Made by a program: the position numbers and the translations under genes. From positions 1,116,001 to 1,178,659 of the forward strand of contig NW_026782009.1 of assembly GCF_031769215.1 (NCBI RefSeq): a stretch of DNA of 62,659 bases. Direction: 5' to 3'. The notes under the pieces were generated by a model. That model did no database searches and was not told where the DNA came from. It worked only from the letters and a program-made list of their open reading frames with translations. Origin of the DNA: Ylistrum balloti (taxonomy: Eukaryota). This document shows, piece by piece, positions 1 through 62,659 of this stretch. How positions within the stretch are numbered: the first letter of the stretch is position 1; each line of letters begins with the position of its first letter.

Positions 1-137
1 ATCCAGATATGTTCGTCACTCTGACGAAGGCCCGGATGGCGTCACCTACTGGCCAGTGTCAAGCTTTCTCCGCTAACGCCGATGGATACGCTCGTGGAGA
101 GGGATGCGGTATCGTCATACTAGAAAGGCTAAATAAT
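1..137 (+). CDS. PKS exon, mid-KS domain (runs off left edge)
   Basis: [45 protein letters not shown] contains the KS motif (F..ADGY.RGEG). Donor AAT|GTATGT at 137/138, phase 0. Confidence 0.93.
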
Positions 138-3100
138 GTATGTTGTCTGTACATGTTTGGACAAATCATTTTTTATCATGTGCTATTGTGAACAAATGAA
201 TTTTGTCAATTGTTCAATTGTTAATTTTCGCTCAAACGAGGATCATTATCACAAACTTTCAGCTGTAGTTAACCATCGAAAATACTATTACAGGCTCTAA
301 AGAATGGCAGACATATTTGGGCGACTATCCGCACGGGCTGTAACCAAGATGGACAGACTGTGAGGCCAATTACTGCACCATCAGGGATCCAACAGAATCG
401 ACTTCTTCATGACATATATCTTCACTCCAACAACATCAACCCGAGCCATGTCCAGTACATAGAGGCCCATGGTATGTATGTTTATATGCGTTAGATACTG
501 CACAGAACTTAAAACTGTTGCAGTGTCGGTCTCCTTCCACAGACTGTTAACTATAAATCTCCCGTGGAGACATCAACTATCATAATAACCTATTAGGATC
601 TTCCAAAAGTGAGTTTGGTCGTACAATAAAACATTTTACGAATAAGAATGCGATCTGCTGATTCGCCCATCTTCAGAATATTTCAAACTCCTTCTTGTTG
701 CATTTAGTCATGTCTCTTTACTTTTAACTGTTCCGTGAGTGATGAAATCTGGAAGTGAATATTCTTTAGAATGACTAGTTCTCCAATTGACGATAACATT
801 CCATTTTCACCTCTTTTGAGACATCTTCTGTTTTGAGCATTGGTAGGAAACAAGGGTAACTAATATTTGAGATTTTAAAAGGATTCATCTTAAACGACAA
901 ATATCCCCTCACTTAAGTTTATCAGCATTTGTTAAAATATCTTGGACAGACTCGAGTTTCAGTATTATTGGGTCAAGGTCAAGGCCACTGTTACTCTTTG
1001 AAATGATTGTTAGCGCTCTATGGCTTCAGTCTTAACTGGATTTTTCAATAAACACCACACGCTTATAAAGCATCAAATACTTGGATAAGCTCAAGTGCCA
1101 AGGCTGATGTGTTGCGGTCATTGTTACAATTGCAAATCACTTATATATATGCGTGGGGTTTGTTTTCACTTTAATATATGAGGAGAGTCAATCGCTAATT
1201 AAAATATCTCACAATGTTTCCACGAGACACACCGACTTAATTGTATTCTTATGGAATCGGAACGGAAAGTGCAAAAAAATAGTAAAAAGAGAAAATCATT
1301 ATTCAATATTATCTTCGTGTTGCAGGACTACATCAGCAATAGTTGGAAATATTTACGATGTCCAAGGTGCTGGAACTGTTCAATTGTCTGCTTCGACCGT
1401 AATAGAAACGGACTTTAAAATTAACACATATCATAACACATCTACATACGCTTTTAGCACATTGATTGAAACGAGTAGATATCTCTCCTATGTAGTAACT
1501 CGGTATTTTTTTTTATAAATGTACTTACATAGTTAAAATTACAAGTAAAACTAATATTATTTGGTTATGAAAAAATATGATTTTCTGAAGTAATAAATTA
1601 GACGACAGAAAATTCGTTCCAAGAGAGAGAAACAATTATGACCACTCTCTTTCATCATTCTTTCACTAATCTATTTACAATGCATTGCATCTAGCAAAAT
1701 CATATGATATTCATATAACACTGAAATCAGGTTTCGTAATCATATGCAATATAAGTTAAATTCTTACATGTCGTTCTTTGTTTTGCCTCTTCTGTTTTAG
1801 CGCCGATCGTTCGATGTTTTGCATTTACATTTTCCGTTTTTCATCGACAATTTTCATTTTAAAAAAATCTTGGTCTGTATTTATATAGGTTAGGGTTTTG
1901 TGATTCAACTTACGAAAAAAGCGTTTTGTTTGATTGCTTTTGGTCTTTTAAAGGAATTGATTTAATAACGAGAAACATGAACGTATCTGAAAAATACTAT
2001 CCGTTTGCAAAAATTGAAAAAAAAACTCATATGATTAATTGATTTGGAAATGCTTTTTATAGTCTGAATGGTTAATAACAGTAAAAATATACTTATATTT
2101 ATGTTTATTCCAAATTAGCGGTATGCTTGACACTTAAGTGATAGAAACATGCAATGAAATTTTACGAAAATGTTCGCGTTTCTTCTGCTTCAGGTACCGG
2201 TACACCAATCGGCGACCCGGTCGAGGTCAACAGTCTTGGGAGCTTCTTTAAAGATTATCCGATACAGCCCAATTATGTGACCAAACAGCGGTTTATCGGA
2301 TCTGTTAAAACAAACATAGGACATCTGGAATCTGGTGCAGGAGCTGCAAGTCTCATTAAGACTCTTTTGATGATGAACCATGCAACAATTGTACCATCTC
2401 TTCATTCGCTTCCACGGAACCCGAAAATAGACTTTGAGAATTACGAACTGCAAATACCTACATCGGTTAACCCATGGCCTGTACTAGAAGATGGTTCAAG
2501 AGCTGCCTGCATAAATTGTTTCGGATTTGGTGGAACGAACAGTCATGCCTTTGTACGACAATGGGTTGGAAGGTCGAACGATACTAATACAACAATGAAC
2601 AAGAACCTCAAATCCACGTGCATTCCACTTTCGGCAAAATCTCAAACGTGTCTGATTAAAGTACTTAGCCATTTGGTTAAACGACTGACAGAAGAACCAT
2701 GCGATCTGAAGCAACTGTCATACACTGCTTCGTGCAAACGAGATCACTTTCGATACCGGAAATTGTTCGTTGCATTCACTATTGCAGATCTTATCGAAAG
2801 TTGCACAGGGGCAATTGAAAGAATGAAAGATGAAAATATTAAACCCGGCAGGAATATCAGGATAGTATACGTGTTTTGTGGCGTCGGGACCACATGGACG
2901 AAAATGGGCATGGAACTTGTTCGACATTTCCCTGTATTTGCTGACACCTTGAAGCGCATTGATAACTATCTGACGTCAATGACTGGATGGTCAGTAGAGG
3001 ACATAATACGTGATGGAGCAAAAATGGATGACCCCTTCATTAGTCATATTGGTATATTTGCATGTCAAGTTGGACTGTCAGACCTCTGGAAACATTGGGG

Positions 3101-6100
3101 AATCTCTCCTGACGCGATTGTAGGTCAATCCGTTGGTGAAGTAGCCGCTGCCTATAGTAGTGGGGTACTATCTCTGAAAGATGCTGTCAAAGTAATTTAC
3201 CACAGGTCCAGGTTGCTGGCAGAGGAATCGGGAGGCAAAATGATAGTGGTAACGAATGTTAATACCACATATGTATCCAAGATATGTAAAAAGGTTGGCC
3301 ATGTTGATATAGCAGTACATATCAGTCCAAATGCATGTACAATAAGTGGTGATGCCAAAGAAGTAAATGAAGTGAAAAACCTCATAGCAATGCATACTAA
3401 AAACACGAGTGAAATTCCTTTGTTTCATGACTTGAATGTCCAGTGTGCTTATCATAGTTTCAAGATGGAAAACGCAGCAAAACGCATTACAGAATGTCTT
3501 AATGGAATTAAAGCTAATCCCCCAGATATTCCAGTATTTTCCACCGTGACAGGAATGATAGCAGAAGATTTCGGTACACCCGAGTATTGGGAAAAAAATG
3601 TCGAAAGGCCAGTATTATTTCACCAGGCAATTAAAGAATCGACGGGTAAAGAGTCAACTATATTCCTGGAACTCGGTCCTCGGCCAGTTTTGAAGGCTCA
3701 TTTGAGTGACATATTCACAAAGGAAGTTGTCACTTCAATTCCATGTATGAAATTTGGTACAGGTTCAATTCAAGTGTTGACTGCGCTTGGTGATTTGTAC
3801 ACATTAGGCGTTAATCCATGCTGGGGAAATATCGTAGAGAAAACAAACCTGACAGACTTGCCTCAATATCAGTTTGACGGTAAGGTCTTAATGGTAGAGT
3901 CCGACTACCGCTTCCTCCGAAAACAGGGATTGATGAATGATTGCTCGGGTAGGTACCTTATGTTGACACAAACAGATACGAAAGGGAAATTTAAGGTTAA
4001 TTTAAGTCCAAGCGAAACACCTTTCGTGTATGACCATGTTATCGATGACGTCGTCGTCATTCCAGGTGCTGTTTACGCTGAGGTGGCATTTGAACTGGGT
4101 ATGAGTGTCATGAATGTAGCAGCTGAATGTTTGCATGTTGAGTACGATATCATCAAAGTGGTCCCCTTGTCGAAAGATAAACCGTTTTATCTGGATATCG
4201 CATCCAACATAGAAGAAACGAATGATTGCTTGATGAAAATTGTTTTTTCAATCACCAAGGATACAATAACGGTTGTCGAAGGATCTGTGACAAACATACT
4301 TCCCACACATTTGCCAACTGTTCAAAATGAGGATATATTCATAAGTACTGGGAACAATTTGGAGCGTGAACAGTTATATAAAGCGTTGGCAATGCATGGA
4401 TACAAATATGGAACTAGAAGTCAGGTCTTGGAAAGAATTATATTCAACAAAAACGAATGCACTGCCTATATAAATCTCACTGAAGGAGTGGCACGACAAA
4501 TTAATCGAACAGCTTTCCATCCTGCTATTCTAGATGCAATGCTTCACTCGAGCGCTCTAATATTCCTTTCTCAACAAAATGAAACATCTAACAAAATCTA
4601 CCCGGTCCGCCTTGGTAGCGTTACCGTGTTTAGATCGTTAGAGAAACGAATGTTGTGTTATACCCGGATCATAAAAGAGGTCAGTGATAGGAGCATAACC
4701 AACATCATTCTTACTACACACAATGGTTTGGTGCTGGCTGAAGTGAAGGAAATCGAACACAATATCATGAATGGTAGCACGGGTGTAAACACATTTGCTT
4801 ATCAGATTGCTTGGACTGAAGAGAATGTGCCAGATGTTATCTGCGATACCCAAGACGACCCAAAACAAAATGTTATCATCTGCTACGACGACAGCGGCAT
4901 TCACACCTTACTTAGGAGTTTTTATCCACGAGGAGAATCCTTTCGACTGAGAGACGTGGCTGACGACCCTGAGTCCATGATATCCGCAATAGACACTGAA
5001 GGTGTGAAGATGACCTTAATTGTTCCAGACTCTTATACTGCCTCACAAAGCGAAAGTAGCGATCATATTTTTGATAATATTTGCAAATGCTGCGAGGCAT
5101 TCCTCAACATTATGAAGAAGCTAAAATACACAGACAAAACTTTGATAATAGTTACAGAGAATACACAAGATGGTGGCTATGAAAAAAATATCAAACAAAA
5201 TGTTTTTGGTTCTGAACTATGGGGGTTTGCTAGATCTTTACGACAAGAAGGTACCAGATGTCGGATTGTATTGATCGATATCCAGCCATCTATTCCCATG
5301 GAAGTGGAGACATTGAACAAAGCCATTCTTTTTTTCATGTCCTCCGATCAAGCTAGTACGCTTACGGAATGTCTAGTTGCTGATGGCAAAATACATAGTA
5401 ACTTCCTACAGCGAGGACTGCATAAAGGTTTAGAAAATGTACACAGAACATTGTACCCTGATACAAATCTACGTCTTCAGGTTCGCAGTACCAAGCCAGA
5501 CAGAGTAGAACGCCCGTTCCTCATACCTGCAGACAACACATGTGTTTCAAAGAAAAATGACATAATTCTTCAAGTTGATGCAATTTGTAGTCACTCGTCA
5601 TCCATATTTTGCGTCACTGAGTTAGATTCAAGTATTGACAATTCACTTTGGACAGATTGGCAAGGTTACCCAGTTATAGGATTAGAATTTCAAGGAACTA
5701 TTATGGGCAAAAAGCAACACGTTGTGGCATGTCACCCTACAAGAGCTACCAATTTGATATCTATACCAGAATGTTGTGTTTGTGAACGATCAAAATTGCC
5801 AATGTATACACCGGGTCTCATCATCAATGCAATGTTAATGTGGCATATCATGCAGCATGTTGAAGACAAATCTGTAGTTTATATCGTCACAGACTCTGAC
5901 CCGTCTGATGATGCACCACTTGCCCTTCTTCGTGATATGATCTTGACGACAAAGCACTGCCAAGTCAAAATAGCATCGATTCACTCTCTCAATGATGCCT
6001 GTGAATGTGAGAATGGCGTGTTTATTTTATTAGAAAAACTTTCCTTATCACAAATAACATGTATTTTACGATTTGGAAATACCATTGTGGGTTATTTCGA

Positions 6101-9100
6101 TGCCATGGGATGCGTGTCAACTCGACAATATCAGATATGCTCAAGAGGGATTAAAGTATGTATCATTAAGCAAAATGACGTGTTTTCTGACATCAACGTC
6201 ATTAGTACTTTTCCAAAAGTAATACGTTGGCTACAACGACAATCAAGAAACCATGATGTAACTTATAATAATCGAAGACCACTAATGACCATCAAATTCC
6301 CTCACGCTAAGGATTCGGAAAAAGATGATATAGAAATAAAGGCAGTTGGAGACATGCTCATCCATAACAATGCAACTTATGTTGTTGTTGGTGGACTGAC
6401 AGGTCTGGGTTGGGAGATTGTTAAATGGCTTGGTTTCAAAGGTGCTGGGATTGTGGTGTCGCTTTCTAGGAGAGATTGTAATCAACAGATGATTGAAAAA
6501 CTTCAAAACGCGATGGATATACATAAGTATCAAATTACCCCTGTGAAGTGTGACATTAAGAATTATGCAGATGTTAAGAATGCGTTTGCTAACATAAAAT
6601 CGCAGTTTCCAAATCATCCAATCAAGGGTATATTCCAGGGAGCAGGAGTTTTGAAAGATACCCGAATTGAAACTATGACAATGGACAATTTCAAGTCAGT
6701 GTTGTGCCCAAAAGTCTTGGGATCATGGAACTTACATCTTGTCTCCAAAGAGTTACCCTTGGATTTCTTCGTAATGCATTCTTCAGTTACTTCGGTATTT
6801 GGAAATGCCGGCCAAACAAGTTACGGGGCTGCCAATTCGTTCATGGATTCATTAGCCTTATACAGAAGGGCCAATAATCTGCCCGGTCAGAGCATCAACT
6901 GGGGAGCATTGGCGGTGGGTATGGCAAGCAACGCAACGATAAGGAATAGCCTTGAAGCTAATGGGTATTTTTTGTTGGAAACGAATCAGATTAAGGAATG
7001 TCTTTTAGATGTTCTGACTCGAAATCCAAGCCAAATAGTGTATGGCTTATTTGACTGGAATATTTTAAGAAAAAATCCCGCCATGATGCGGACCTCTGGA
7101 TTTGATAGCGAGGAGATGTCAAATGCCAGACAGTCATCCATGCAACGGCATGTCAACACAGAGCTCGACATTGCCAATTTCAAGGAAGCGTCTCATGAGG
7201 AACAGAGACAGATTATCGTTGATTTGTTTTTCTCTAGCCTCTCCAGAGTTTTATCAGCATATGACAGAGCAGAAGTAAAGAATCAAAATCTTCTAAGTCT
7301 TGGCATGGAGTCGCAAAAAGCCATAGAATTAATCCAAGCCTTTAAGGACGCTACTGGTTGTAGACTTCCGTTGGCCTATATTCTGTCTCCTGAATATTCT
7401 GTAGAGATGCTTATTGACTTTGCTCATTCTAGTATCACCGCTAACATCGACAGGGAGGTTCATTCCCCAGTGAAATGTGAAAATGTACATGAATCACCGT
7501 CGTGGATGGAAAAATTCTATTTAGACATACACGAAATAAATCAGAAAGATTCAAGTCTTTGGTTCAGCATTGCTTTTAAACTAGGGAGCGGTCTATCCGA
7601 TATCGGAATGTGGCGTACTGTCTTGCGACGGATTACTATCAAACACCGAGAATTGAGAACAGCGTATCAACCTAGCGGGCGAAGATTCGGATTCAGAAAA
7701 GTTACTGCGGATCCAGAGGATGCCAAGGTTGACTTTCGGTGTGTAGATTCTAGCGTTATAACGAGTGAGAAAGACGAAGATATTGCAAAATATTGCACTT
7801 TCGATATAGCAAAAGATCCGCCGTTGCGAGTTCTGTATTGTGACACTGGAAAAAAGCATCGCCTGAGATTCATTATTAGTCACATCACTATGGACCTGGG
7901 AAGCCTTTTCACGCTCGTTGAACAATTGCAGCTGTACATTCCAGCGTTTTTTCTTCATAAACATATCGATTTGACACCTGTAGAGACTCCAGATTTTGCT
8001 GTGCTGATGGAAGAACGAATCGAGTCTGAGAGGGTACATCTTGATAATTTCTGGAGAGGAGAGCTTGAAAAGAGTCGCAGTGTGCCATCTGTAGTTGGGG
8101 ATAAAGTACCCAAACATATGTCAGGAAAGACAAAGAAATTATCTAAGCTTCTACCAAGAGAGCTGGTTGATAATATCAGTCTCGACGTATATCACATAAC
8201 TGTACCTACTCTACTATTTAGTTTGTATCAGATTCTTCTACATGAGATGACATGCGTGTCTGCTGTTCCGGTTGTGCTGACAGTGGACATGCGCCGACAC
8301 TTTCCGGAGTTCATTGGAAAGATATTTCTTGGTACCAACTACATTCCAGTCATAACACAGCTCCCCAGGGTATGTGCAACATTACGAGAATGCATTTCAT
8401 TGTGCTCCAACCAGATGTTGCTCGCGAGTGCGAACAGCTTGTACCCATTCCAACTTATCAAACAAATTGATATTGATAAAGAGAACTATTTCCGACATTT
8501 TTTCAATGTAAGAGACATATCAAAACAACTCGAAAAACGTGAAATGTATTCAAATTACCATATGACAAATATAGGCTATATCACCGGTTTCCTAAACAAA
8601 GTGGAGACAGCTTTAAATGTGGTGACTGGTCGCCAGGACAGATCTATGGAATTAGTGTTGAGTTATGACTCAGAAATTGTCAGTTCCTCCAAAGCTGAAA
8701 GTATGCTTAACGACCTTGTGCTACTGGCCAGTGCTGCTGTAGCAAATCCAGATCTCGGACTGAAAGACATACCTTTGGAGTGTTATCAAACCGAGGCTTC
8801 CGACAAAATGGACCCTCACTTGCCTATGGGTAAATATTGTGTTACAATTTGTCGTCGTGAAATTTTATATATCTTGATTATTGCCTAGTGTCAAATTGGA
8901 CACTGCGTCTGTTTTCGTCAATTCAATGTTCCCTTAGCAAATGACAGATAACTCACTTATTAATTCTGATTATAAATGGACATCGTTGTAAACAATTTCA
9001 CTAAAATAGACAAGAAATGGAATGCTATGAAATGTATGCTTGTATAGTATATATTTGGTTACTAGTAAATGAGACCAACGAAATACCAGAGAGAAATCTG

Positions 9101-11666
9101 CCATTTCTTTTTGGAAAAAAAATCGCCAATATTTTGTCACATTTTGTTCGATTTTCAAATCTGAGGTATCAAAGTAATCGCATACGGTAATAAATAAATT
9201 GCCTACAAGGAAAACTAAAAATACAAACTAAACTAACACACCTTTCATTCATTGTATATGTGAATTACGACCGGCGAATTCCCCGATGTAGCTATGCATG
9301 TCCGCTAAAATTCAGGTCAAACAAGGCTATTATAAAGTCAAAACGTCATACCATCTATTTGATTAATTTTAAAGGGGACAATTTTCGATTTCATATTCAC
9401 ATAAACAAGCTCCGGATCGTATGCAAGGTATTTAGTTAATATCAGAAAATAGACTTCTTCTCGATTTCATTCAAATCAAATCCGTCTCCATTACCGAAAT
9501 AGGAACAGGGCAAAAGATTTTTCAACAGATGTATTGGATTGGTTGATTTTATTCATTGGTTCATCAAAAATGTCCTTAAAAATGTAAAATTATCCCGTTC
9601 CTATTTTCATTCAATATTAATTTGAAGTTAAAAGAGTCACAGGGAGCTGATAGTTTGTCAGTAGCATACTGCAATCAATTGCTATATAAAGTAATGATAA
9701 ATATTTATAAAAATCGATCTTTCGGATTTCGATAGGAGTCAAAGGTCAAAAGTGATATGTTGTTTACAAGCATTTTGAAAAACTTCTAATGTTCTACCGA
9801 TGAGATTTATCTCATTCTTGCCTGAAAACCCCGGTATAGTCCGGACCAAGTATTAATATTTTTGAGTTGGTCGGAAATTAAATATGAACTCCCATATCGC
9901 CTTCTTGAAAAAACACATTTGAATCTATTTTTCCAGTTTGACCAGTGTCATTGAGCTGAAAATTAGTTTGGAAAGGATTCCAAGAAATGTTGCCTTATAA
10001 AGTATTCGAATGCTAGCTAAAAAATGTATCCATGTCAGTTTCTAGATTGGTTTATTTCTAAATAACTTCCGATGGTTTTTTCCGATTAGGACCTATGCTT
10101 CATTTGGTATTGCGTAATTTGGAAATATAAGAAAATGATGCTTCATCGGGATATCCGTTTTTATTTTCATACTTGCTACAAGCCATATATTGCAATAAGT
10201 GCGACATAAATTGGAGATTTTAAAAATTAGATTGTTAATATCTAAACATTCCCATGTAAAAAAAGTGTGAAATCTTAAAATTCACGATTATATGACAGAT
10301 GTATTATGCAAATTACTTTTATCAGGTGCAATTATAGGATCGCACAAAGTTATACAATGTGCGATGTGTGCGTGGTGTATGCACGGTGGGAAACTGAACA
10401 AAATTAGCTATTGCACATTTGTGCGCGCGATGTGCGATTCCATAGGGGTACATACCAATTAAAAATAATAATGAATAAGTGTTGGATAGGATTACTTTGA
10501 TCTCTAGATATATATGAGTACATTTAAGTAAGTTTATTAAGCCATATATTTACAAGTATATACACAAGTGCTTCTTCAGAAGAAGACTGAAGAGTATTTA
10601 AGAGCGTTTTATATACAAAGTAAGTAATGTTTGAAAAGCATGTCACAAAGTTTTTGACGGATTTTTGAAACGATCAACCTTCGAAGTAATGGAATGTACC
10701 ATAACACTACCAAAAGTCCTTGTTTAATTAAAGTTAAATCAAAAGAAACTTACGCTACGACATTTTTGACAGAACAATGCACTGACACTTGAAATTCCCT
10801 CGCTGGACATTATCGATACCACTAACAGGAAAGTCTAATACCAACGAAATCGGACACATGTAGACTCACAGCTCATAGCTTTCTGAAAGCGCAATACATC
10901 ACAAAACTAACGCAGCTGTAAGGACAGGCGATAAAATATTTTGTAACTGTGAAATTGGATATTCAATACGATTTCTGTACCATCAAAATATACAAATGAT
11001 AGCAGTGTTAAGATACAGTTGACCTTGTTGTATAGGCTATGACTTAAGTGGCAACCATTCGTTATGTTAGAACAATTGTATAAACGGCCAGATTAATTCA
11101 TTTGTTCTACAATCTAAAATATTTGGGCTTTTTTAAATAATGTTTTATCAAAGTTTGATTGATTCTTTTATATCATCAAATGTTGGATGATACTAGTCGC
11201 AGCTGCATTACTATTGATTCGTTTATTCCTAGATTTTATGTGCTGTTGTTTTATGCATAAGTTAGAAAATAAAGCATCATCTAACATATGACCGCAAATG
11301 TAAAATATGAAATTGCGTTCTCTTTCTGTTTGCAGCAATATTTATGAAAGAGACTTCAAACGGTTGGGAATATCCAGTGCAGCTGGAATTGGACGTGCAA
11401 AATGATATTACCAGGATAAGATTGATCAATCCTAATGGCCGAGGAACGTCAAGACATAAAGCAATACCAAGTCATTGTATCATTGCTGTAGACATCGGAA
11501 AAATCTCTGGTATGTATAATATGCATTCAATTCAAATACGACAATTTAAAGTTGTTTGGTTATCTCGTTACTCTCGTAAATAGTTCATATCAAAATTCAC
11601 CTTTTTCATCATAGTGGAATAAATTACATCTTTTTTCTAGCTTCTTATTTTGTGCCAACTTACTGA
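1..11666 (+). CDS. Spliced iterative type I PKS with C-terminal NRPS condensation domain (KS-AT-DH-psiKR-psiER-KR-ACP-C-unknown); 5' end outside window
   Basis: Exons 1-137, 294-471, 2194-8829 and 11336-11509 join through GT-AG introns with matching phases (0,1,1). The KS motif EAHG|TGT is rebuilt across intron 472-2193. About 2,380 codons are visible. The 3' end (stop at 11664-11666) is provisional. Confidence 0.9.
294..471 (+). CDS. PKS exon, KS domain (not in ORF track)
   Basis: Acceptor TTACAG|GCT at 293/294. Reads [59 protein letters not shown]+G, with KS motifs NQDG, ITAPS and YIEAHG. Donor CATG|GTATGT at 471/472, phase 1. Confidence 0.93.
2194..8829 (+). CDS. PKS giant exon: KS C-terminus, AT, DH, psiKR, degenerate ER, KR, ACP, condensation domain
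   Basis: Acceptor TTCTGCTTCAG|GT at 2193/2194. Motifs: [11 protein letters not shown] (His 2322) and FGFGGTN; AT GQSVG (Ser 3129) and CAYHS; [13 protein letters not shown] (His 4035) and HPAILD (Asp 4533); KR GGLTGLG (6390), VLKD and SYGAAN (Tyr 6822); ACP LGMESQ (Ser 7311); C domain [26 protein letters not shown] (7878-7901), YPFQ, YDSEIV and ANPD. Probable donor ATGG|GTAAAT at 8829/8830, phase 1. Confidence 0.95.
9275..10157. mobile_element. Possible non-autonomous DNA element in PKS intron
   Basis: Imperfect inverted repeat (14/18): CGAATTCCCCGATGTAGC at 9275-9292 vs reverse complement of 10140-10157. No ORF; no TSD seen. Confidence 0.3.
11336..11509 (+). CDS. Probable next PKS exon; C-terminal extension of unknown domain
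   Basis: Strong acceptor TTCTCTTTCTGTTTGCAG| and donor CTCTG|GTATGT. Phase 1 in and out, matching the 8829 donor. Open frame (A)[57 protein letters not shown]. Confidence 0.72.
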
Positions 11667-12936: not shown

Positions 12937-13909
12937 ATTCCTACCATTTTTTTTAAAAATAATCTTTTCAGATTCCTGGAGTCTTATCATACAAACATCG
13001 AAGAGACATCACAATTTCAAAACCAACGACTATTTTATGGTCCAAGTCTGGAGAGCAAAAATCCGGAAATTGATATCTCCCCGTCCACTGCCGTCATCTT
13101 GATGAGTTAGTGATGCAGAGGCCTGTATGAAGAGTTTGTTTACATGTTTCTTTAAATGGTAGATGTTTCGTAACCTAAAAATTAGCTGAAGCCCTGTATT
13201 GCGGTATCAGAGCTTCAAGAGCTACAAACGATACATTTGTATATTGTATTGATGCTTTGATGTTGTGCAATACATTACTTACATTTGATTGAATTATGGC
13301 ACGTGGACATAAAAGAGGGAATATTTACTTGACGTCTTGTCCAAAGTAAAGATAAGGGTACTGGCAAAGGCGAAGCCAGACTGGTATGGAAGGGTATATG
13401 TTTTATTTACCTTTACTTTTCAAAAGGTTCGAGGTCATGTTCCCAAGGAAAAAAATATTATCGCCTATGGTTTTGTGTACTCTGAAAAATGAATTAAAAT
13501 AAGTTTGATTTGTTTAAAATGGTTCTTTATTAAATCATTTTCCTGAATGTACGTGATTCAGATAAGACACTTTCTTGTGAACATTTTTATTAATCATTTA
13601 CTAGGTAAAATTGTATAGCATCTTTTGTTTATTATTAAAGCTGCAATTTTGATATTATTATAGCAAGCCAACCGGTTATAAGTATTTTCTCTATGTATAT
13701 ATATATCATATTTGTACTTAAAATGTCGTCATGGCTGTCTCTGGTATTCATTAAGATTTCAAAAAGCCACAAAATATAGATAGCATGGATTGGAATTTAA
13801 ATATCGTACGCTTCGGTAAATAAACCTTTCATAATTTCCCCGTGTGGTAAGCCTATTTTAGTTAAGATTACTTAGATAAGTTGTTGTATAGTCATGCAGA
13901 GGAAAGGCG

Positions 13910-56832: not shown

Positions 56833-58333
56833 TGATGACGGACAAGGTGGTTGTCTCTATAGCCTGGAGACCATTCAATGATAACAGGTTTAAGGGGGTG
56901 CAATTTGTTTTTGGTATAGGTATTCCAATCCTCCTACCACTGAGCTTTTAAGATTTGTTAAATAAATGGTTTAAAATCGGTAAAATGAAGTTTCAAAACA
57001 ACAGATGGTAGCGATAAAGTTTCCTTTGCGACACGATCTGCTTTGTCTTTACCTGGTATTCCCATGCGCCTAGGAAACCAGCAAAAAGCAATACGAAAGT
57101 TAAAAGCAAGTTCATGATATAGGATTAATGCATTACGAATGAAAATATTTTCGATATTTTTTATTGTAAGAGTTTGTAGAGCAGAAAGAGTGTCTGAATG
57201 GATAACAGCTCTCATTATTTTGTTTCTTTGAATATATGCAAGGGCGAGGTATATAGCTCGCGCTTCTGCCGAGAATATTGAGGCGTTGTTCGGTAGCCGG
57301 CATCCATAGGTTTCATCTTGTGTCCATGGCCGCAGCAACCTTATAATTATCTTTTGAACCATCACCATATTAATGTAGAAATTGTTTTATATTTTGATTG
57401 CAATTTCGAGAAGGATGAACGAAAGGTGTAACTATCTGTGTATGATTTAAGCATTTCGTGAAGTGAAAAGCCAACTTCAGGTGAATTCATGAGCCAAGGG
57501 TAGAATTTCTATCGTTCCAAATGACTGAATTTGGTTAACATCAATATTTGTTTTTTTTAAAAGAGCAGGAAATCGAATACCAAATGATGGAATAGTTTTT
57601 GGTTTGCCCTGAAACAAGGTTTTATATTTTGGATCAAATACATTGGAAAAAACATGATTTGAAGGATTTGACCTTAGCTGAATGGTGCATTGCACAGCCA
57701 ATTTATTTAGACGGCTAAATAGTGATGGTTCGTTAACTTCTACATAGAGACTTGCTGTAGGTGTGGTCTTAAAAGCTCCGAGAGCGAGCCTGGGACCTTG
57801 GTGATGAACAGTGTCTAATAATTTTAAATATGAAGGTAAGGTCTAGCAGATCCATATACGATGGGACCGTAGTTCAATTTTGATCTCATAATGGCGCTAT
57901 AGTGTCTTAGTAAAACTTTCCTCTCAGTTCCCCAATCAGTGTGGGACACAACCTTTAGAATATTCAGTGCCTTAAGGCATGTGGCTTTAAGGTATTTTAT
58001 GTGTTGAAGAAACGACAATTTTCTGTCTAATATTACGGCTCAACAACCGCAATTGGTGCACCACACTCAGACAGATTTGGATCGTTCTGTTGTTTCCTAA
58101 TTTGACAAAAATGCATACAACTGTTTTTGATTGTGAAAATTTAAAACCATTTCCATCTGCCCAAATTTGTAGTCGATTAAAACATTGTCAAGTTGTCTTT
58201 CGATGGTATTGATATGCTTAGATCGATAGCACATGATGAATTCAACGACATAAAGAGCGCCCTCCATTGTAGGGGATAATGTTTTGACAATACTGTTCAT
58301 TTTAAGTCCAAAAAGTGTAATCGAAAGAATGCT

Positions 58334-60538: not shown

Positions 60539-62659
60539 GCTATCTTGTGGTACACCCATCTCCTGCTGATGAACATCGGAAAGGGTCGTTCCATTCCGGA
60601 CTTGAAATACTCTATCTGATAGAAAATTTGAAAAAAAATGGTTGATTACCTTTAATACCTATATTGTGCAGACCTTTCACTATACCGTATTTCCACGTTG
60701 TGTCGTAAGCCTTTTCCAAATCGAAGGAAACAGCAAGCAAGTGCTCCTTGTTTAGAAAAGCCTCGCGCACAAAGGTTTCAAGTCCAATCAAATGTTCGTT
60801 GGTACCTCGCTTAGATCTAAAACAATTTTGTAGGGGTGAAATTATGCGATTGGATTCCCGATAACAAATTAATCTTGAATTTATCATCCGCTCTAGAGTT
60901 TTACAAACGCAACTCGTAAGTGATATTGGACGGTAACTGGAGGGATCTGTTTTATCTTTACCCTGTTTGGGGATAGGAATCACAGTTGCCATTTTCCATG
61001 ACTTTGGGACATTTCTCGATCTAAAAATATAGTTAAAAATATCTAGAAGTTTTTCTAAAGATGCGTCTGGTAGGTGTTTTAGGAACTAATAGTGAATATC
61101 ATCAGGTCCTGTTGCAGAGTCATGTGATTTTTCCAACGATTCTCGAAGTTCTAACAATGAGAAAGGTTGATTGTAAGTTTCATTGTTTTCGGAAGAAAAT
61201 TTCAATTTAGTTTTTTCACGCGTGGTCTTAAATTTTTGAATTGTTTTTGGAATGATTATTATAAAAAAAAACAGATCACAAAGCATTTGCAATATCAATT
61301 TTCGATGTTGCTAATTTTCATTTAGTTTTCAGATGTCCTATTGTTTTGAATGATGTTTTTTCCACTGATTCGTTTAATCCTATTCCATACATTTTTGGTG
61401 GATGTATTGGAAATTAATTTGGATACTTAAGATCTCCAAGACAATTTTTTCTAAGCATATAGCACGAAGGGCTTTCGCCCGAATAATTTTGTAGTTGTTT
61501 AAGCTATCGCTTGAGGGGTTGTATTTGAATTGCCTCAAAGCGGTTTTCCTATTTCGAATAGCTTTATCACAATTTTCATTAATCCAAGGTCTTTTATTGC
61601 GTTTTCTTTTGGCTTTTGGTATACATACTTCGGCTAGTAAAGGATTCTATTTAACCTAAGGCGTTTTGACAGCATTAATAGAGATCTTGAAGGATCTTGA
61701 AGTAGCTACCTTGTACTCCATATCCTCCAGAGTGCCGAATTTGTTGAAAATGTGAATTGGGTCGTCAGACCCTTTTTTCGTTCTATCTGAGGAAATTTGA
61801 ATTTTCTGCTTTTGCTGGCTTTTCACTTTTTGAGTGTTGGAGGCAGGTTTTGATTGTGATTGAGGGTTCTGATTCTGTTTTGATGGTGATGGTGATGGTG
61901 TTGGTCGCAATGACTGTGTTGAAGTCGTTGATACAGCAGGTCTAAGGCCAGAAAGATTGTCGCACGCTATGTCAGTGTGTGTAACTGCATCACATGTCTG
62001 TGTTGCAGCATCACGGGTCTCCACGGTTTTAATACCAACCTTTGCACGACTGGCATAGGATGAACCCGACGAGGTACTTCAACAATCTTTCTTGCTTCGG
62101 GGAAAATAATGTTGTTTGTATACTTGACGCGAAGGATCTCTTTTAACCTTGCGCCAAGCAGGCAATCTCTAGAATATGCCGGATGCCTTTCATCACAGTT
62201 GGCACAGTGAGTTCGACCATCACAAGCGCCATCTGCTGTCCCATCTTCGTGGCCTACAACACCTCACTTTGTATTAACTTTCTGTTTCTTGGAGTTATCA
62301 GAATGATGTCCAAATTTCTGGCAACCAAAGCATCGCAGTGGATTTGGGATGCAACATCCACACCAACATTTTCGAAGCCAACTTTTACAGGTTTTGGCAA
62401 AATTGGGGTGTTAAAATAAGATCAAAAGTATTGGTGTCACGGATGCTGCCATCTCGCTTCATCCTGATCCGTTTTACATGATTTACTTTCTGTTTTTTTT
62501 TTTTTTTTTTTCTTTTTGTTTTGTTTTTTTTTTAAATAACAGAGGATGTTCTCTTAGCTCTCTCCCTGAAGAGATGGACAACGTATAACGCCCTTTGATG
62601 TGTTCAGTGAGGAGTGAGTGACAACCTGTACAGCTATTTCTAAGAGGTTCTTTGCCTGT

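What the first reader, a model, noticed from the sequence alone, without database searches (positions are those of the whole stretch)
7490..8780. Variant C-domain active site SHITMDLG, with no partner adenylation domain
Seen: canonical HHxxxDG reads S-H-I-T-M-D-L. The catalytic second His (7881) and Asp (7893) are kept; the first His and the Gly are changed. No A-domain or second carrier motif occurs anywhere in the window. Inference: the acceptor nucleophile is a free small molecule or comes in trans. The Gly-to-Leu change may reshape the acceptor channel, or the domain may be a cyclising/release-type C domain.
Basis: partly seen in the sequence, partly recalled or inferred. Interest (0 to 1): 0.7.

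Follow-up and report, generated by a model that had tools for sequence, protein, structure and literature searches.

The report
Scallop polyketide synthase's terminal condensation domain
A scallop polyketide synthase gene ends in a conserved, intact condensation domain with an SHxxxDL active-site motif and then a PH domain, which probably releases the finished chain onto an unknown acceptor instead of joining it to an amino acid.

Summary
Codons 7878-7904 read S-H-I-T-M-D-L-G-S and align to HHxxxDG of solved condensation (C) domains. The second His and the Asp are kept; the first His and the Gly are replaced.

The domain is complete. Pfam Condensation scores E 1.8e-16, the AlphaFold model has pLDDT 93, and it matches the LgrA C domain at Z 37.5. 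It sits at the end of an intron-containing scallop (Pectinidae) gene: KS-AT-DH-KR-ACP-C, plus two small exons encoding a PH domain.

The motif does not drift. Thirteen pectinid homologues (55-88% identical) keep [S/C]HxxxDL[Q/G]S. dN/dS of the C domain is 0.19-0.27, no higher than the rest of the exon.

The domain belongs to a family of about 45 PKS-C proteins. All named members are molluscs, and none has an adenylation domain. In this family Asp-Leu replaces Asp-Gly. One His sits at either the first or the second motif position, never both.

No adenylation domain or second carrier lies in the window or within 10 kb of two orthologous genes.

The best reading is a chain-releasing acyltransferase. 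It would work like the mycobacterial Mas/PapA5 pair, fused into one protein, or like a fungal terminal C domain. The acceptor is unknown and no activity or expression was tested.

I found no paper describing this family.

The parts
1..137 (+). Partial ketosynthase exon. The gene runs off the 5' end of the window and the KS active-site Cys is not in view.
   Evidence: tblastn of P0001/P0002 residues 208-312 onto window 3-473. Reading frame and donor GT at 138-139 come from the sequence.
294..471 (+). Ketosynthase exon. It ends ...YIEAH-G, and the HGTGT motif is completed across the splice junction.
   Evidence: Acceptor AG at 292-293, donor GT at 472-473.
2194..8829 (+). Large exon encoding the KS C-terminal part, AT, DH, a roughly 480-residue region with no Pfam match, KR, ACP and the C domain.
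   Evidence: Pfam hits: Ketoacyl-synt_C, Acyl_transf_1, PS-DH, KR, a weak PP-binding hit, and Condensation. The frame 2154-8888 is open for 2244 codons. The exon is 94.8% identical at DNA level to locus L001. Acceptor AG at 2192-2193 and donor GT at 8830-8831.
7311..7313 (+). Ser codon of the ACP phosphopantetheine-attachment motif (LSLGMESQK). This ACP would be the donor carrier for the C domain.
   Evidence: The motif G-[MIL]-E-S is conserved in the pectinid homologues, and G-x-D-S in most other family members. The Pfam PP-binding hit is weak, E 0.006.
7491..8829 (+). Complete condensation domain (446 residues).
   Evidence: Pfam E 1.8e-16. AlphaFold pLDDT 93.1. VIA-align Z 37.5 to the LgrA C domain and 37.1 to the fuscachelin PCP-C didomain. 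dN/dS 0.19-0.27.
7878..7904 (+). C3 active-site motif S-H-I-T-M-D-L-G-S. His is at 7881-7883 and Asp at 7893-7895.
11336..11509 (+). First PH-domain exon ([21 protein letters not shown]...).
   Evidence: tblastn of ten pectinid homologues. Splice sites read. A profile of the family tails hits the GRK2 PH domain 1bak at E 1.3e-5, then other PH domains. The nearest ESM Atlas clusters by features carry PH Pfam families, with scores of 0.81-0.89, which count as leads only.
12972..13102 (+). Second PH-domain exon and stop codon (...DSWSLIIQTSKRHHNFKTNDYFMVQVWRAKIRKL...; TGA at 13100-13102).

Best explanation
The domain is the catalytically competent chain-release domain of an iterative, partly reducing animal polyketide synthase with the architecture KS-AT-DH-KR-ACP-C-PH. 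The enzyme has no thioesterase. I propose that the upstream ACP (Ser codon 7311) brings the finished acyl thioester to the donor side of the C domain. His at 7881 then acts as general base, or positions the nucleophile. The nucleophile is a hydroxyl or amine that is not delivered by a carrier domain of the same protein. The chain leaves as an ester or amide. The C-terminal PH domain suggests that this step happens at a membrane, so the acceptor may be a lipid or another membrane-proximal molecule.

Shown here: the domain is complete; the His/Asp motif and the active-site scaffold are conserved; selection is purifying; no A-T partner is present; the architecture is fixed across a mollusc family.

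Inferred: catalysis itself, the kind of nucleophile, and membrane targeting.
For: - The domain is a complete C domain fold.
- The second His, the Asp and the following Leu and Ser are invariant in the 13-row pectinid alignment, and 13 pectinid homologues keep the motif. Twenty-four of the 53 family rows keep the second His.
- Other residues that are (nearly) invariant in the 58 bacterial NRPS C domains are also kept in the family: R56 47/53, W188 53/53, R268 48/53, N283 52/53, P319 53/53.
- dN/dS of the C domain is 0.27 against L001 and 0.19 against L002. The whole exon gives 0.33 and 0.19. The N-lobe, which carries the motif, gives 0.11-0.29.
- The ACP Ser motif just upstream is conserved.
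- Pfam finds no thioesterase or reductase release domain in the large exon.
- No A domain is in the window, within 10 kb of the genes at L001 and L002, or in any family protein.
- The family is one clade against the sampled bacterial NRPS C domains, SH-aLRT 100. It scores 80-400 bits per domain against 20-61 bits for NRPS C domains.
- The tail is a PH domain.
- Precedents come from papers. Fungal terminal C domains with SHxxxD release chains (PMC10510592, PMC6260248). PapA5 offloads the thioesterase-less iterative PKS Mas onto phthiocerol (PMC12370991).
Against: - No biochemical evidence exists and no expression evidence was obtained. The only public run holding this stretch is DNA, since one contig spans the intron.
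- In the wider family, 23 of 53 rows have His only at the first motif position and 6 have none. This resembles LovB/MokA CON and X domains, which the cited paper describes as not forming amide bonds (PMC6260248).
- Structure search does not separate subtypes. Elongating C domains score Z about 37, MokA CON 34.3 and HtmB2-CT 34.5.
- I could not inspect the model's tunnels.
- The model was built on an alignment half made of bacterial NRPS C domains, so it leans towards the canonical shape.
Confidence: 0.45

Rival explanations
1. The domain is a non-catalytic scaffold, as proposed for LovB/MokA CON or the glycopeptide X domain. It would hold the PKS reaction chamber together or recruit a partner enzyme, and another protein would release the chain.
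For: The position matches LovB CON: at the C-terminal end of a reducing iterative PKS, after the ACP (PMC6260248, PMC13492342). In the mollusc family 29 of 53 C domains lack the second His, yet they keep the fold-defining residues and the domain itself. The family's common function may therefore not need that His. MokA CON is a close structural match, Z 34.3.
Against: The window's clade and its sister clades keep the second His, the residue CON and X domains have lost (PMC6260248). The N-lobe around the motif is the most constrained part of the domain against L002, dN/dS 0.11. In the family, 47 of 53 rows have exactly one His at one of the two adjacent positions and none has both. That pattern is not what free drift of a dead site would give.
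Confidence: 0.2
2. The domain is a cyclising release domain like fungal terminal C (CT) domains. An internal hydroxyl or amine of the polyketide attacks the thioester and a macrolactone or lactam is released, with no second substrate.
For: The motif SHxxxDxxS matches the form given for fungal terminal C domains. TqaA CT has Ser in place of the first His (PMC10510592, PMC6260248). The domain is at the C-terminal side of the only carrier, with no acceptor carrier. KR and DH without an ER could leave hydroxyls on the chain.
Against: No sequence kinship to fungal CT domains was detected beyond the superfamily. PDB sequence searches at E up to 1 return only bacterial C domains. The nearest relatives outside the family are bacterial NRPS C domains. 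The same motif also occurs in fungal elongating C domains (PMC10212144). A PH domain is not explained by self-cyclisation.
Confidence: 0.15
3. The domain is an ordinary condensation domain whose acceptor is an aminoacyl- or acyl-carrier protein encoded elsewhere in the genome (a stand-alone A-T protein), giving a polyketide-amino acid hybrid in trans.
For: The closest sequences and structures are elongating bacterial C domains. The alignment shows no family-specific insertion or deletion longer than 3 residues inside the domain that could plug an acceptor entry. Scallops are reported to carry at least one A-T-R type NRPS gene, assigned to bursatellin synthesis (PMC11869996).
Against: No A domain or second carrier lies in 62.6 kb of window or within 10 kb of the genes at two orthologous loci. 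None of about 45 family proteins has one fused. The DGW part of the motif that is typical of NRPS C domains is replaced by DL plus a non-Trp residue across the family. That argues for a changed acceptor side.
Confidence: 0.15
4. The domain is a decaying remnant of a former PKS-NRPS hybrid, evolving without constraint.
For: Two of the seven positions of the canonical motif are changed. The A-T part of a putative ancestral NRPS module is absent.
Against: The frame is open for 2244 codons. dN/dS is 0.19-0.27. All core motifs are conserved at 55-60% identity among paralogues from at least four named scallop genera. The architecture is shared with mussels, oysters, pearl oysters, unionids and a limpet.
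Confidence: 0.03

Closest known systems
Fungal terminal condensation-like (CT) domains, e.g. TqaA CT (PDB 5DIJ)
   Same: It is the last catalytic domain after the last carrier, with no downstream A-T. The first His of the motif is replaced by Ser, and the second His and the Asp are kept (SHxxxDxxS) (PMC10510592, PMC6260248).
   Different: CT domains end NRPS or PKS-NRPS lines and cyclise peptides. Here the line is a pure PKS in an animal. No specific sequence kinship was found, the nearest outside relatives are bacterial, and a PH domain follows.
LovB / MokA CON domain of fungal highly reducing PKSs (PDB 6AD3)
   Same: Same place in the architecture: reducing iterative PKS, then ACP, then a C-like domain, with no A-T. 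The structural match is Z 34.3 over 407 residues.
   Different: CON has HRxxxDG, so it has lost the second His, and is reported unable to form amide bonds (PMC6260248, PMC13492342). The window's domain has lost the first His and keeps the second. About half of the wider mollusc family does resemble CON in this respect.
Mycobacterial Mas + PapA5 (iterative PKS without thioesterase, offloaded by a C-superfamily acyltransferase onto a lipid diol)
   Same: A thioesterase-less iterative PKS whose ACP-bound product would be removed by a condensation-type enzyme acting on a nucleophile that is not carrier-bound (PMC12370991). Automatic annotation of several homologues reads 'mycocerosic acid synthase-like'.
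   Different: PapA5 is a separate protein, whereas here the C domain is fused. I found no sequence match to PapA5 in the PDB searches. The resemblance is functional analogy only and was not tested.
Bacterial elongating (LCL-type) NRPS condensation domains, e.g. LgrA, fuscachelin PCP-C, SrfA-C
   Same: These are the best sequence and structure matches: E 8e-7 and Z 37.5. The domains are collinear, with no indel longer than 3 residues inside the domain.
   Different: Identity is 15-25%. The motif is HHIxxDGWS in 46-58 of 58 sampled domains, against x-H/H-x ... D-L-x-S in the family. Those domains always work with a downstream A-T module, which is absent here.

Membership tests
NRPS condensation-domain superfamily (Pfam PF00668) | Score above Pfam's gathering threshold over most of the profile | tested here: met
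   60.4 bits against a cut-off of 30.6, covering profile positions 17-444 of 456.
NRPS condensation-domain superfamily (Pfam PF00668) | Two-lobed (V-shaped) chloramphenicol-acetyltransferase-like fold | tested here: met
   The model has pLDDT 93.1. TM 0.75-0.81 and Z 34-37.5 to many solved C domains.
NRPS condensation-domain superfamily (Pfam PF00668) | Canonical HHxxxDG motif | tested here: not met
   The motif reads SHxxxDL. The second His and the Asp are present; the first His and the Gly are replaced. Variants of this kind occur in accepted members (PMC10510592).
Fungal terminal (CT) cyclising C domains | SHxxxDx-type motif at the end of the line, after the last carrier | tested here: met
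   motif form taken from PMC10510592.
Fungal terminal (CT) cyclising C domains | Specific sequence or structure kinship to CT domains rather than to other C subtypes | tested here: not met
   PDB sequence searches return only bacterial C domains. HtmB2-CT scores Z 34.5, below elongating C domains at about 37, though the differences are small.
Fungal terminal (CT) cyclising C domains | [quoted passage not shown] | not testable with these tools
   Model coordinates are not exposed to scripts. Only the lack of family-specific indels could be checked.
LovB/MokA CON-type domains | C-like domain fused after the ACP of a reducing iterative PKS, with no A-T | tested here: met
LovB/MokA CON-type domains | Second His replaced (HRxxxDG) | tested here: not met
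   The window has S-H, so the second His is kept. By contrast, 23 of 53 family rows have His at the first position only.
Elongating NRPS C domain of a PKS-NRPS hybrid | Downstream adenylation and carrier domains supplying the acceptor | tested here: not met
   None is in the window, within 10 kb of the genes at L001 and L002, or in any family protein. A partner elsewhere in the genome was not testable.
Mollusc PKS-C(-PH) family (defined here) | C domain scoring at least 75 bits against the pectinid profile, fused to KS-AT-DH-KR-ACP, forming one clade against NRPS C domains | tested here: met
   (SH-aLRT 100). Named members come from Pecten, Argopecten, Mizuhopecten, Ylistrum, Mytilus, Pinctada, Saccostrea, Sinanodonta and Patella.

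The most novel reading that the evidence does not exclude
Molluscs have a lineage-specific class of membrane-targeted polyketide synthases (KS-AT-DH-KR-ACP-C-PH). In this class the fused C domain would directly ester- or amide-link a polyene-type chain to a lipid, sugar or protein acceptor at a membrane. This chemistry would produce the bound polyene pigments of mollusc shells. The switch of the single His between the two motif positions would mark two mechanistic subclasses.
Probability: 0.12. Interest if true: 0.85.

Novelty: new variant of a known kind. Interest (0 to 1): 0.55.

Why it matters
Animal polyketide synthases are few and mostly uncharacterised, and how they release their products is largely unknown. 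This work defines a conserved family, so far named only from molluscs, in which release is apparently handled by a fused condensation domain followed by a PH domain. To my knowledge, and in the papers I could search, that combination has not been described.

If the domain is catalytic, its acceptor decides what bivalves actually make. The product could be a free acid, a lactone, or a lipid or protein conjugate.

This bears on the unresolved origin of shell polyene pigments. Papers report bivalve mantle PKS genes that rise with shell or nacre colour (PMC12652611) and a disputed clam macrolide claim (PMC9894158). Whether those genes belong to this family was not checked.

The family also offers a natural experiment on the C-domain active site. 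His occurs at position 1 or at position 2, never both. Asp-Leu replaces Asp-Gly.

Tried and rejected
- **First AlphaFold run.** The 13-sequence alignment gave an unusable N-lobe, pLDDT below 50 for residues 1-171. I replaced it with a 111-sequence alignment.
- **Structure searches.** Foldseek PDB, VIA-align and ESM Atlas confirm the fold but cannot tell C subtypes apart.
- **NCBIfam.** It gave nothing useful for the domain.
- **Expression.** The only public run holding the stretch is DNA, because one contig spans the intron. It gave no splice or expression evidence.
- **Model coordinates.** They are not available to scripts, so no tunnel or docking analysis was possible.
- **Pfam on the tail and on eight other window ORFs.** It found no PH hit and only reverse-transcriptase fragments. 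The PH assignment came from a family profile against PDB sequences and from the ESM Atlas.
- **Literature.** Eight searches found no description of a mollusc PKS ending in a C domain or a PH domain.
- **Clam 'erythromycin' PKS MpES.** Its link to this family could not be checked because no sequence was in hand.
- **Decaying-remnant reading.** Rejected on dN/dS and conservation.
- **P0001's annotated non-PH tail.** It looks like a gene-model artefact, since locus L001 contains both PH exons.
Full report
**What is there**

The window is animal nuclear DNA, about 35% G+C, with very few long open frames. One frame, 2154-8888, is open for 2244 codons. Pfam finds in it the C-terminal half of a ketosynthase, an acyltransferase, a dehydratase, a ketoreductase, a weak carrier-protein match and a Condensation domain. 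The Condensation hit has E 1.8e-16 and covers profile positions 17-444 of 456.

Upstream pieces at 1-137 and 294-471 continue the ketosynthase, with normal splice sites. This is therefore an intron-containing gene that runs off the 5' end of the window.

The closest proteins in the word-indexed database are 13 scallop (Pectinidae) proteins of about 2600 residues. The named ones come from Pecten maximus, Mizuhopecten yessoensis, Argopecten irradians and Ylistrum balloti. The window itself is 94.8% identical in DNA, exon and introns alike, to a locus in assembly GCA_031769215.1.

**The observation**

The motif lies in a complete domain. All seven classical core motifs are recognisable. With a 111-sequence alignment AlphaFold gives pLDDT 93.1 and pTM 0.91. 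The model superposes on solved condensation domains at Z 34-37.5 over about 400-420 residues.

tblastn with 18 bacterial NRPS proteins finds nothing in the window but this domain and the carrier before it. The claim of no adenylation domain and no second carrier therefore holds at that sensitivity.

**Is the motif under selection?**

That is not what is seen.

Thirteen pectinid homologues, 55-88% identical to the window in this domain, read [S/C]-H-[VI]-[ST]-[FM]-D-L-[QG]-S. His, Asp, Leu and the last Ser are invariant in the alignment.

I computed Nei-Gojobori dN/dS on codon alignments of the large exon. For the C domain it is 0.27 against L001 and 0.19 against the Pecten maximus orthologue L002. 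The whole exon gives 0.33 and 0.19. The N-lobe, which carries the motif, gives 0.29 and 0.11. dS against L002 is saturated, so the second set is only indicative.

The carrier domain just upstream keeps its Ser motif, G-[MIL]-E-S, in the pectinids.

**A wider family**

A profile of the pectinid domains was searched against 1.84 billion representative proteins. The search returned about 45 proteins whose single C domain scores 80-400 bits. Where the protein is full length, the C domain follows KS-AT-DH-KR-ACP. None of these proteins has an adenylation core motif. C domains of multimodular NRPSs score only 20-61 bits each.

Every member that carries a name is a mollusc: Pecten, Argopecten, Mytilus, Pinctada, Saccostrea, Sinanodonta, Potamilus and the limpet Patella. 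About 30 members are unnamed. The best-scoring outside domains that carry a name are bacterial: Chitinophagaceae, Arcicella and a gammaproteobacterium.

In a maximum-likelihood tree the 53 family domains are separated from the 58 NRPS domains by a branch with SH-aLRT 100. This was a quick search with the LG+G4 model. The tool warned that long branches meet, so the inner order is not reliable.

The motif pattern in the family is unusual:
- Asp is present in 53 of 53 rows.
- Leu follows the Asp in 39 of 53. In the NRPS set Gly follows in 46 of 58.
- The Trp two residues after the Asp is lost. It is present in 51 of 58 NRPS domains.
- His sits at the second position only in 24 rows, including the window's clade and the N-H clade of Mytilus, Pinctada and Argopecten.
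- His sits at the first position only in 23 rows, for example the H-K motif of Sinanodonta.
- His is at neither position in 6 rows.
- His is never at both positions.

Two independent aligners agree on this.

**What follows the domain**

The C-domain exon ends at 8829. Exons at 11336-11509 and 12972-13102 are conserved in the pectinid homologues. Similar tails occur in Mytilus, Argopecten, Saccostrea, Patella and Sinanodonta members.

A profile of 15 tails hits the PH domain of GRK2 (1bak) at E 1.3e-5, followed by FARP1, IRS-1 and other PH domains. The nearest ESM Atlas clusters by sequence features also carry PH Pfam families. Their scores are 0.81-0.89, which the tool counts as a lead only.

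The protein therefore reads KS-AT-DH-(unassigned region)-KR-ACP-C-PH.

**How it most likely works**

The protein has a single carrier, no thioesterase or reductase, and no acceptor module. The C domain is intact and constrained, with its catalytic His and Asp and the surrounding conserved residues in place: R56, W188, R268, N283 and P319.

The simplest reading is that it offloads the ACP-bound chain by acyl transfer to a nucleophile not carried by the same protein. The PH domain suggests that this happens at a membrane.

Known systems that work this way are:
- fungal terminal C domains, which also have Ser-His (PMC10510592, PMC6260248);
- the mycobacterial pair Mas/PapA5, in which a C-superfamily enzyme moves the product of a thioesterase-less iterative PKS onto a lipid diol (PMC12370991).

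I put this reading at 0.45.

**Rivals**

- **Cyclising release, as in fungal CT domains (0.15).** It fits the motif but not the lack of kinship or the PH domain.
- **Non-catalytic scaffold like LovB/MokA CON (0.2).** It is suggested by the many family members without the second His. It is countered by the strict retention of that His in this clade and by the one-His-never-two pattern.
- **Canonical condensation with a trans A-T partner (0.15).** It fits the closeness to elongating C domains and the absence of family-specific indels. No partner is in view, and the Asp-Gly-Trp part of the motif is remodelled.
- **Decay.** This is excluded as far as sequence can show.

**What is not known**

- No activity was tested and no product is known.
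- No expression data were obtained. The single public run that holds this stretch is DNA.
- The AlphaFold model rests on an alignment half composed of bacterial C domains.

**Comparison with the literature**

SHxxxD by itself is not new. Reviews give it as the normal motif of fungal terminal C domains and of an atypical fungal elongating subtype (PMC10510592, PMC10212144).

A C-like domain ending a reducing PKS is also known from LovB (PMC6260248, PMC13492342).

Three things appear to be undescribed in the eight full-text searches I ran:
- an animal family with this architecture;
- its Asp-Leu motif with a single His at either of two positions;
- the PH domain after it.

Two papers report bivalve mantle PKS genes linked to nacre colour or to a macrolide (PMC12652611, PMC9894158). 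I could not check whether those genes belong to this family. They remain leads.

**Verdict**

This is a new variant of a known kind, of moderate to good interest. The decisive steps are a His-mutant release assay and channel analysis.

Noticed in passing
window 11336-11509 and 12972-13102 (+): Two small exons after the C domain encode a PH domain. The family-tail profile hits the GRK2 PH domain at E 1.3e-5. The tail is shared by mussel, oyster, unionid and limpet members. To my knowledge a PH domain on a polyketide synthase is unusual.
   Followed up: partly
alignment A2, C3 motif columns (window 7878-7883): Across 53 mollusc PKS-C domains the His sits at the second motif position (24), the first position (23) or neither (6), and never both. 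All but one of the 58 bacterial NRPS C domains sampled have both.
   Followed up: partly
window 40878-40756 (-): A stretch 55-68% identical to residues about 18-64 (ketosynthase N-terminus) of the scallop PKSs, with in-frame stop codons. No other PKS exons lie nearby on that strand. It is probably a dead exon fragment of a paralogue.
   Followed up: partly
window 62658-62560 (-); L001 about 42.5 kb: This stretch is 69% identical to the annotated C-terminal tail of P0001. P0001's gene model skips the PH exons, although locus L001 contains them (L001 29226-29826 and 32039-32387). P0001's tail is therefore probably a gene-model artefact.
   Followed up: partly
window 2194-8829 vs L001 20635-27307: Synonymous divergence is uneven along the exon. 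dS is 0.05 in KS-AT and 0.22 in the C domain. This could reflect gene conversion among the clustered paralogues, or a recombinant history.
   Followed up: no
window ORF residues about 900-1380 (window about 4850-6290): About 480 residues between DH and KR have no Pfam match, so no enoylreductase or methyltransferase is detected. With DH and KR motifs present, this would fit an unsaturated or polyene-type product.
   Followed up: no
window 60615-60992 (-), 56961-57368 (-), and repeats at 43.7-58.2 kb: Reverse-transcriptase fragments are present (RVT_1 E 6.6e-14; RVT_3 weak). Dispersed repeats are shared several times with locus L001. This is retroelement debris downstream of the gene.
   Followed up: no
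contigs of P0002/P0008, P0004/P0007/P0012, P0005/P0006: Two or three paralogous PKS-C genes lie on the same contig or chromosome in several scallop assemblies. Two adjacent family genes occur in Sinanodonta. This suggests tandem gene clusters.
   Followed up: no
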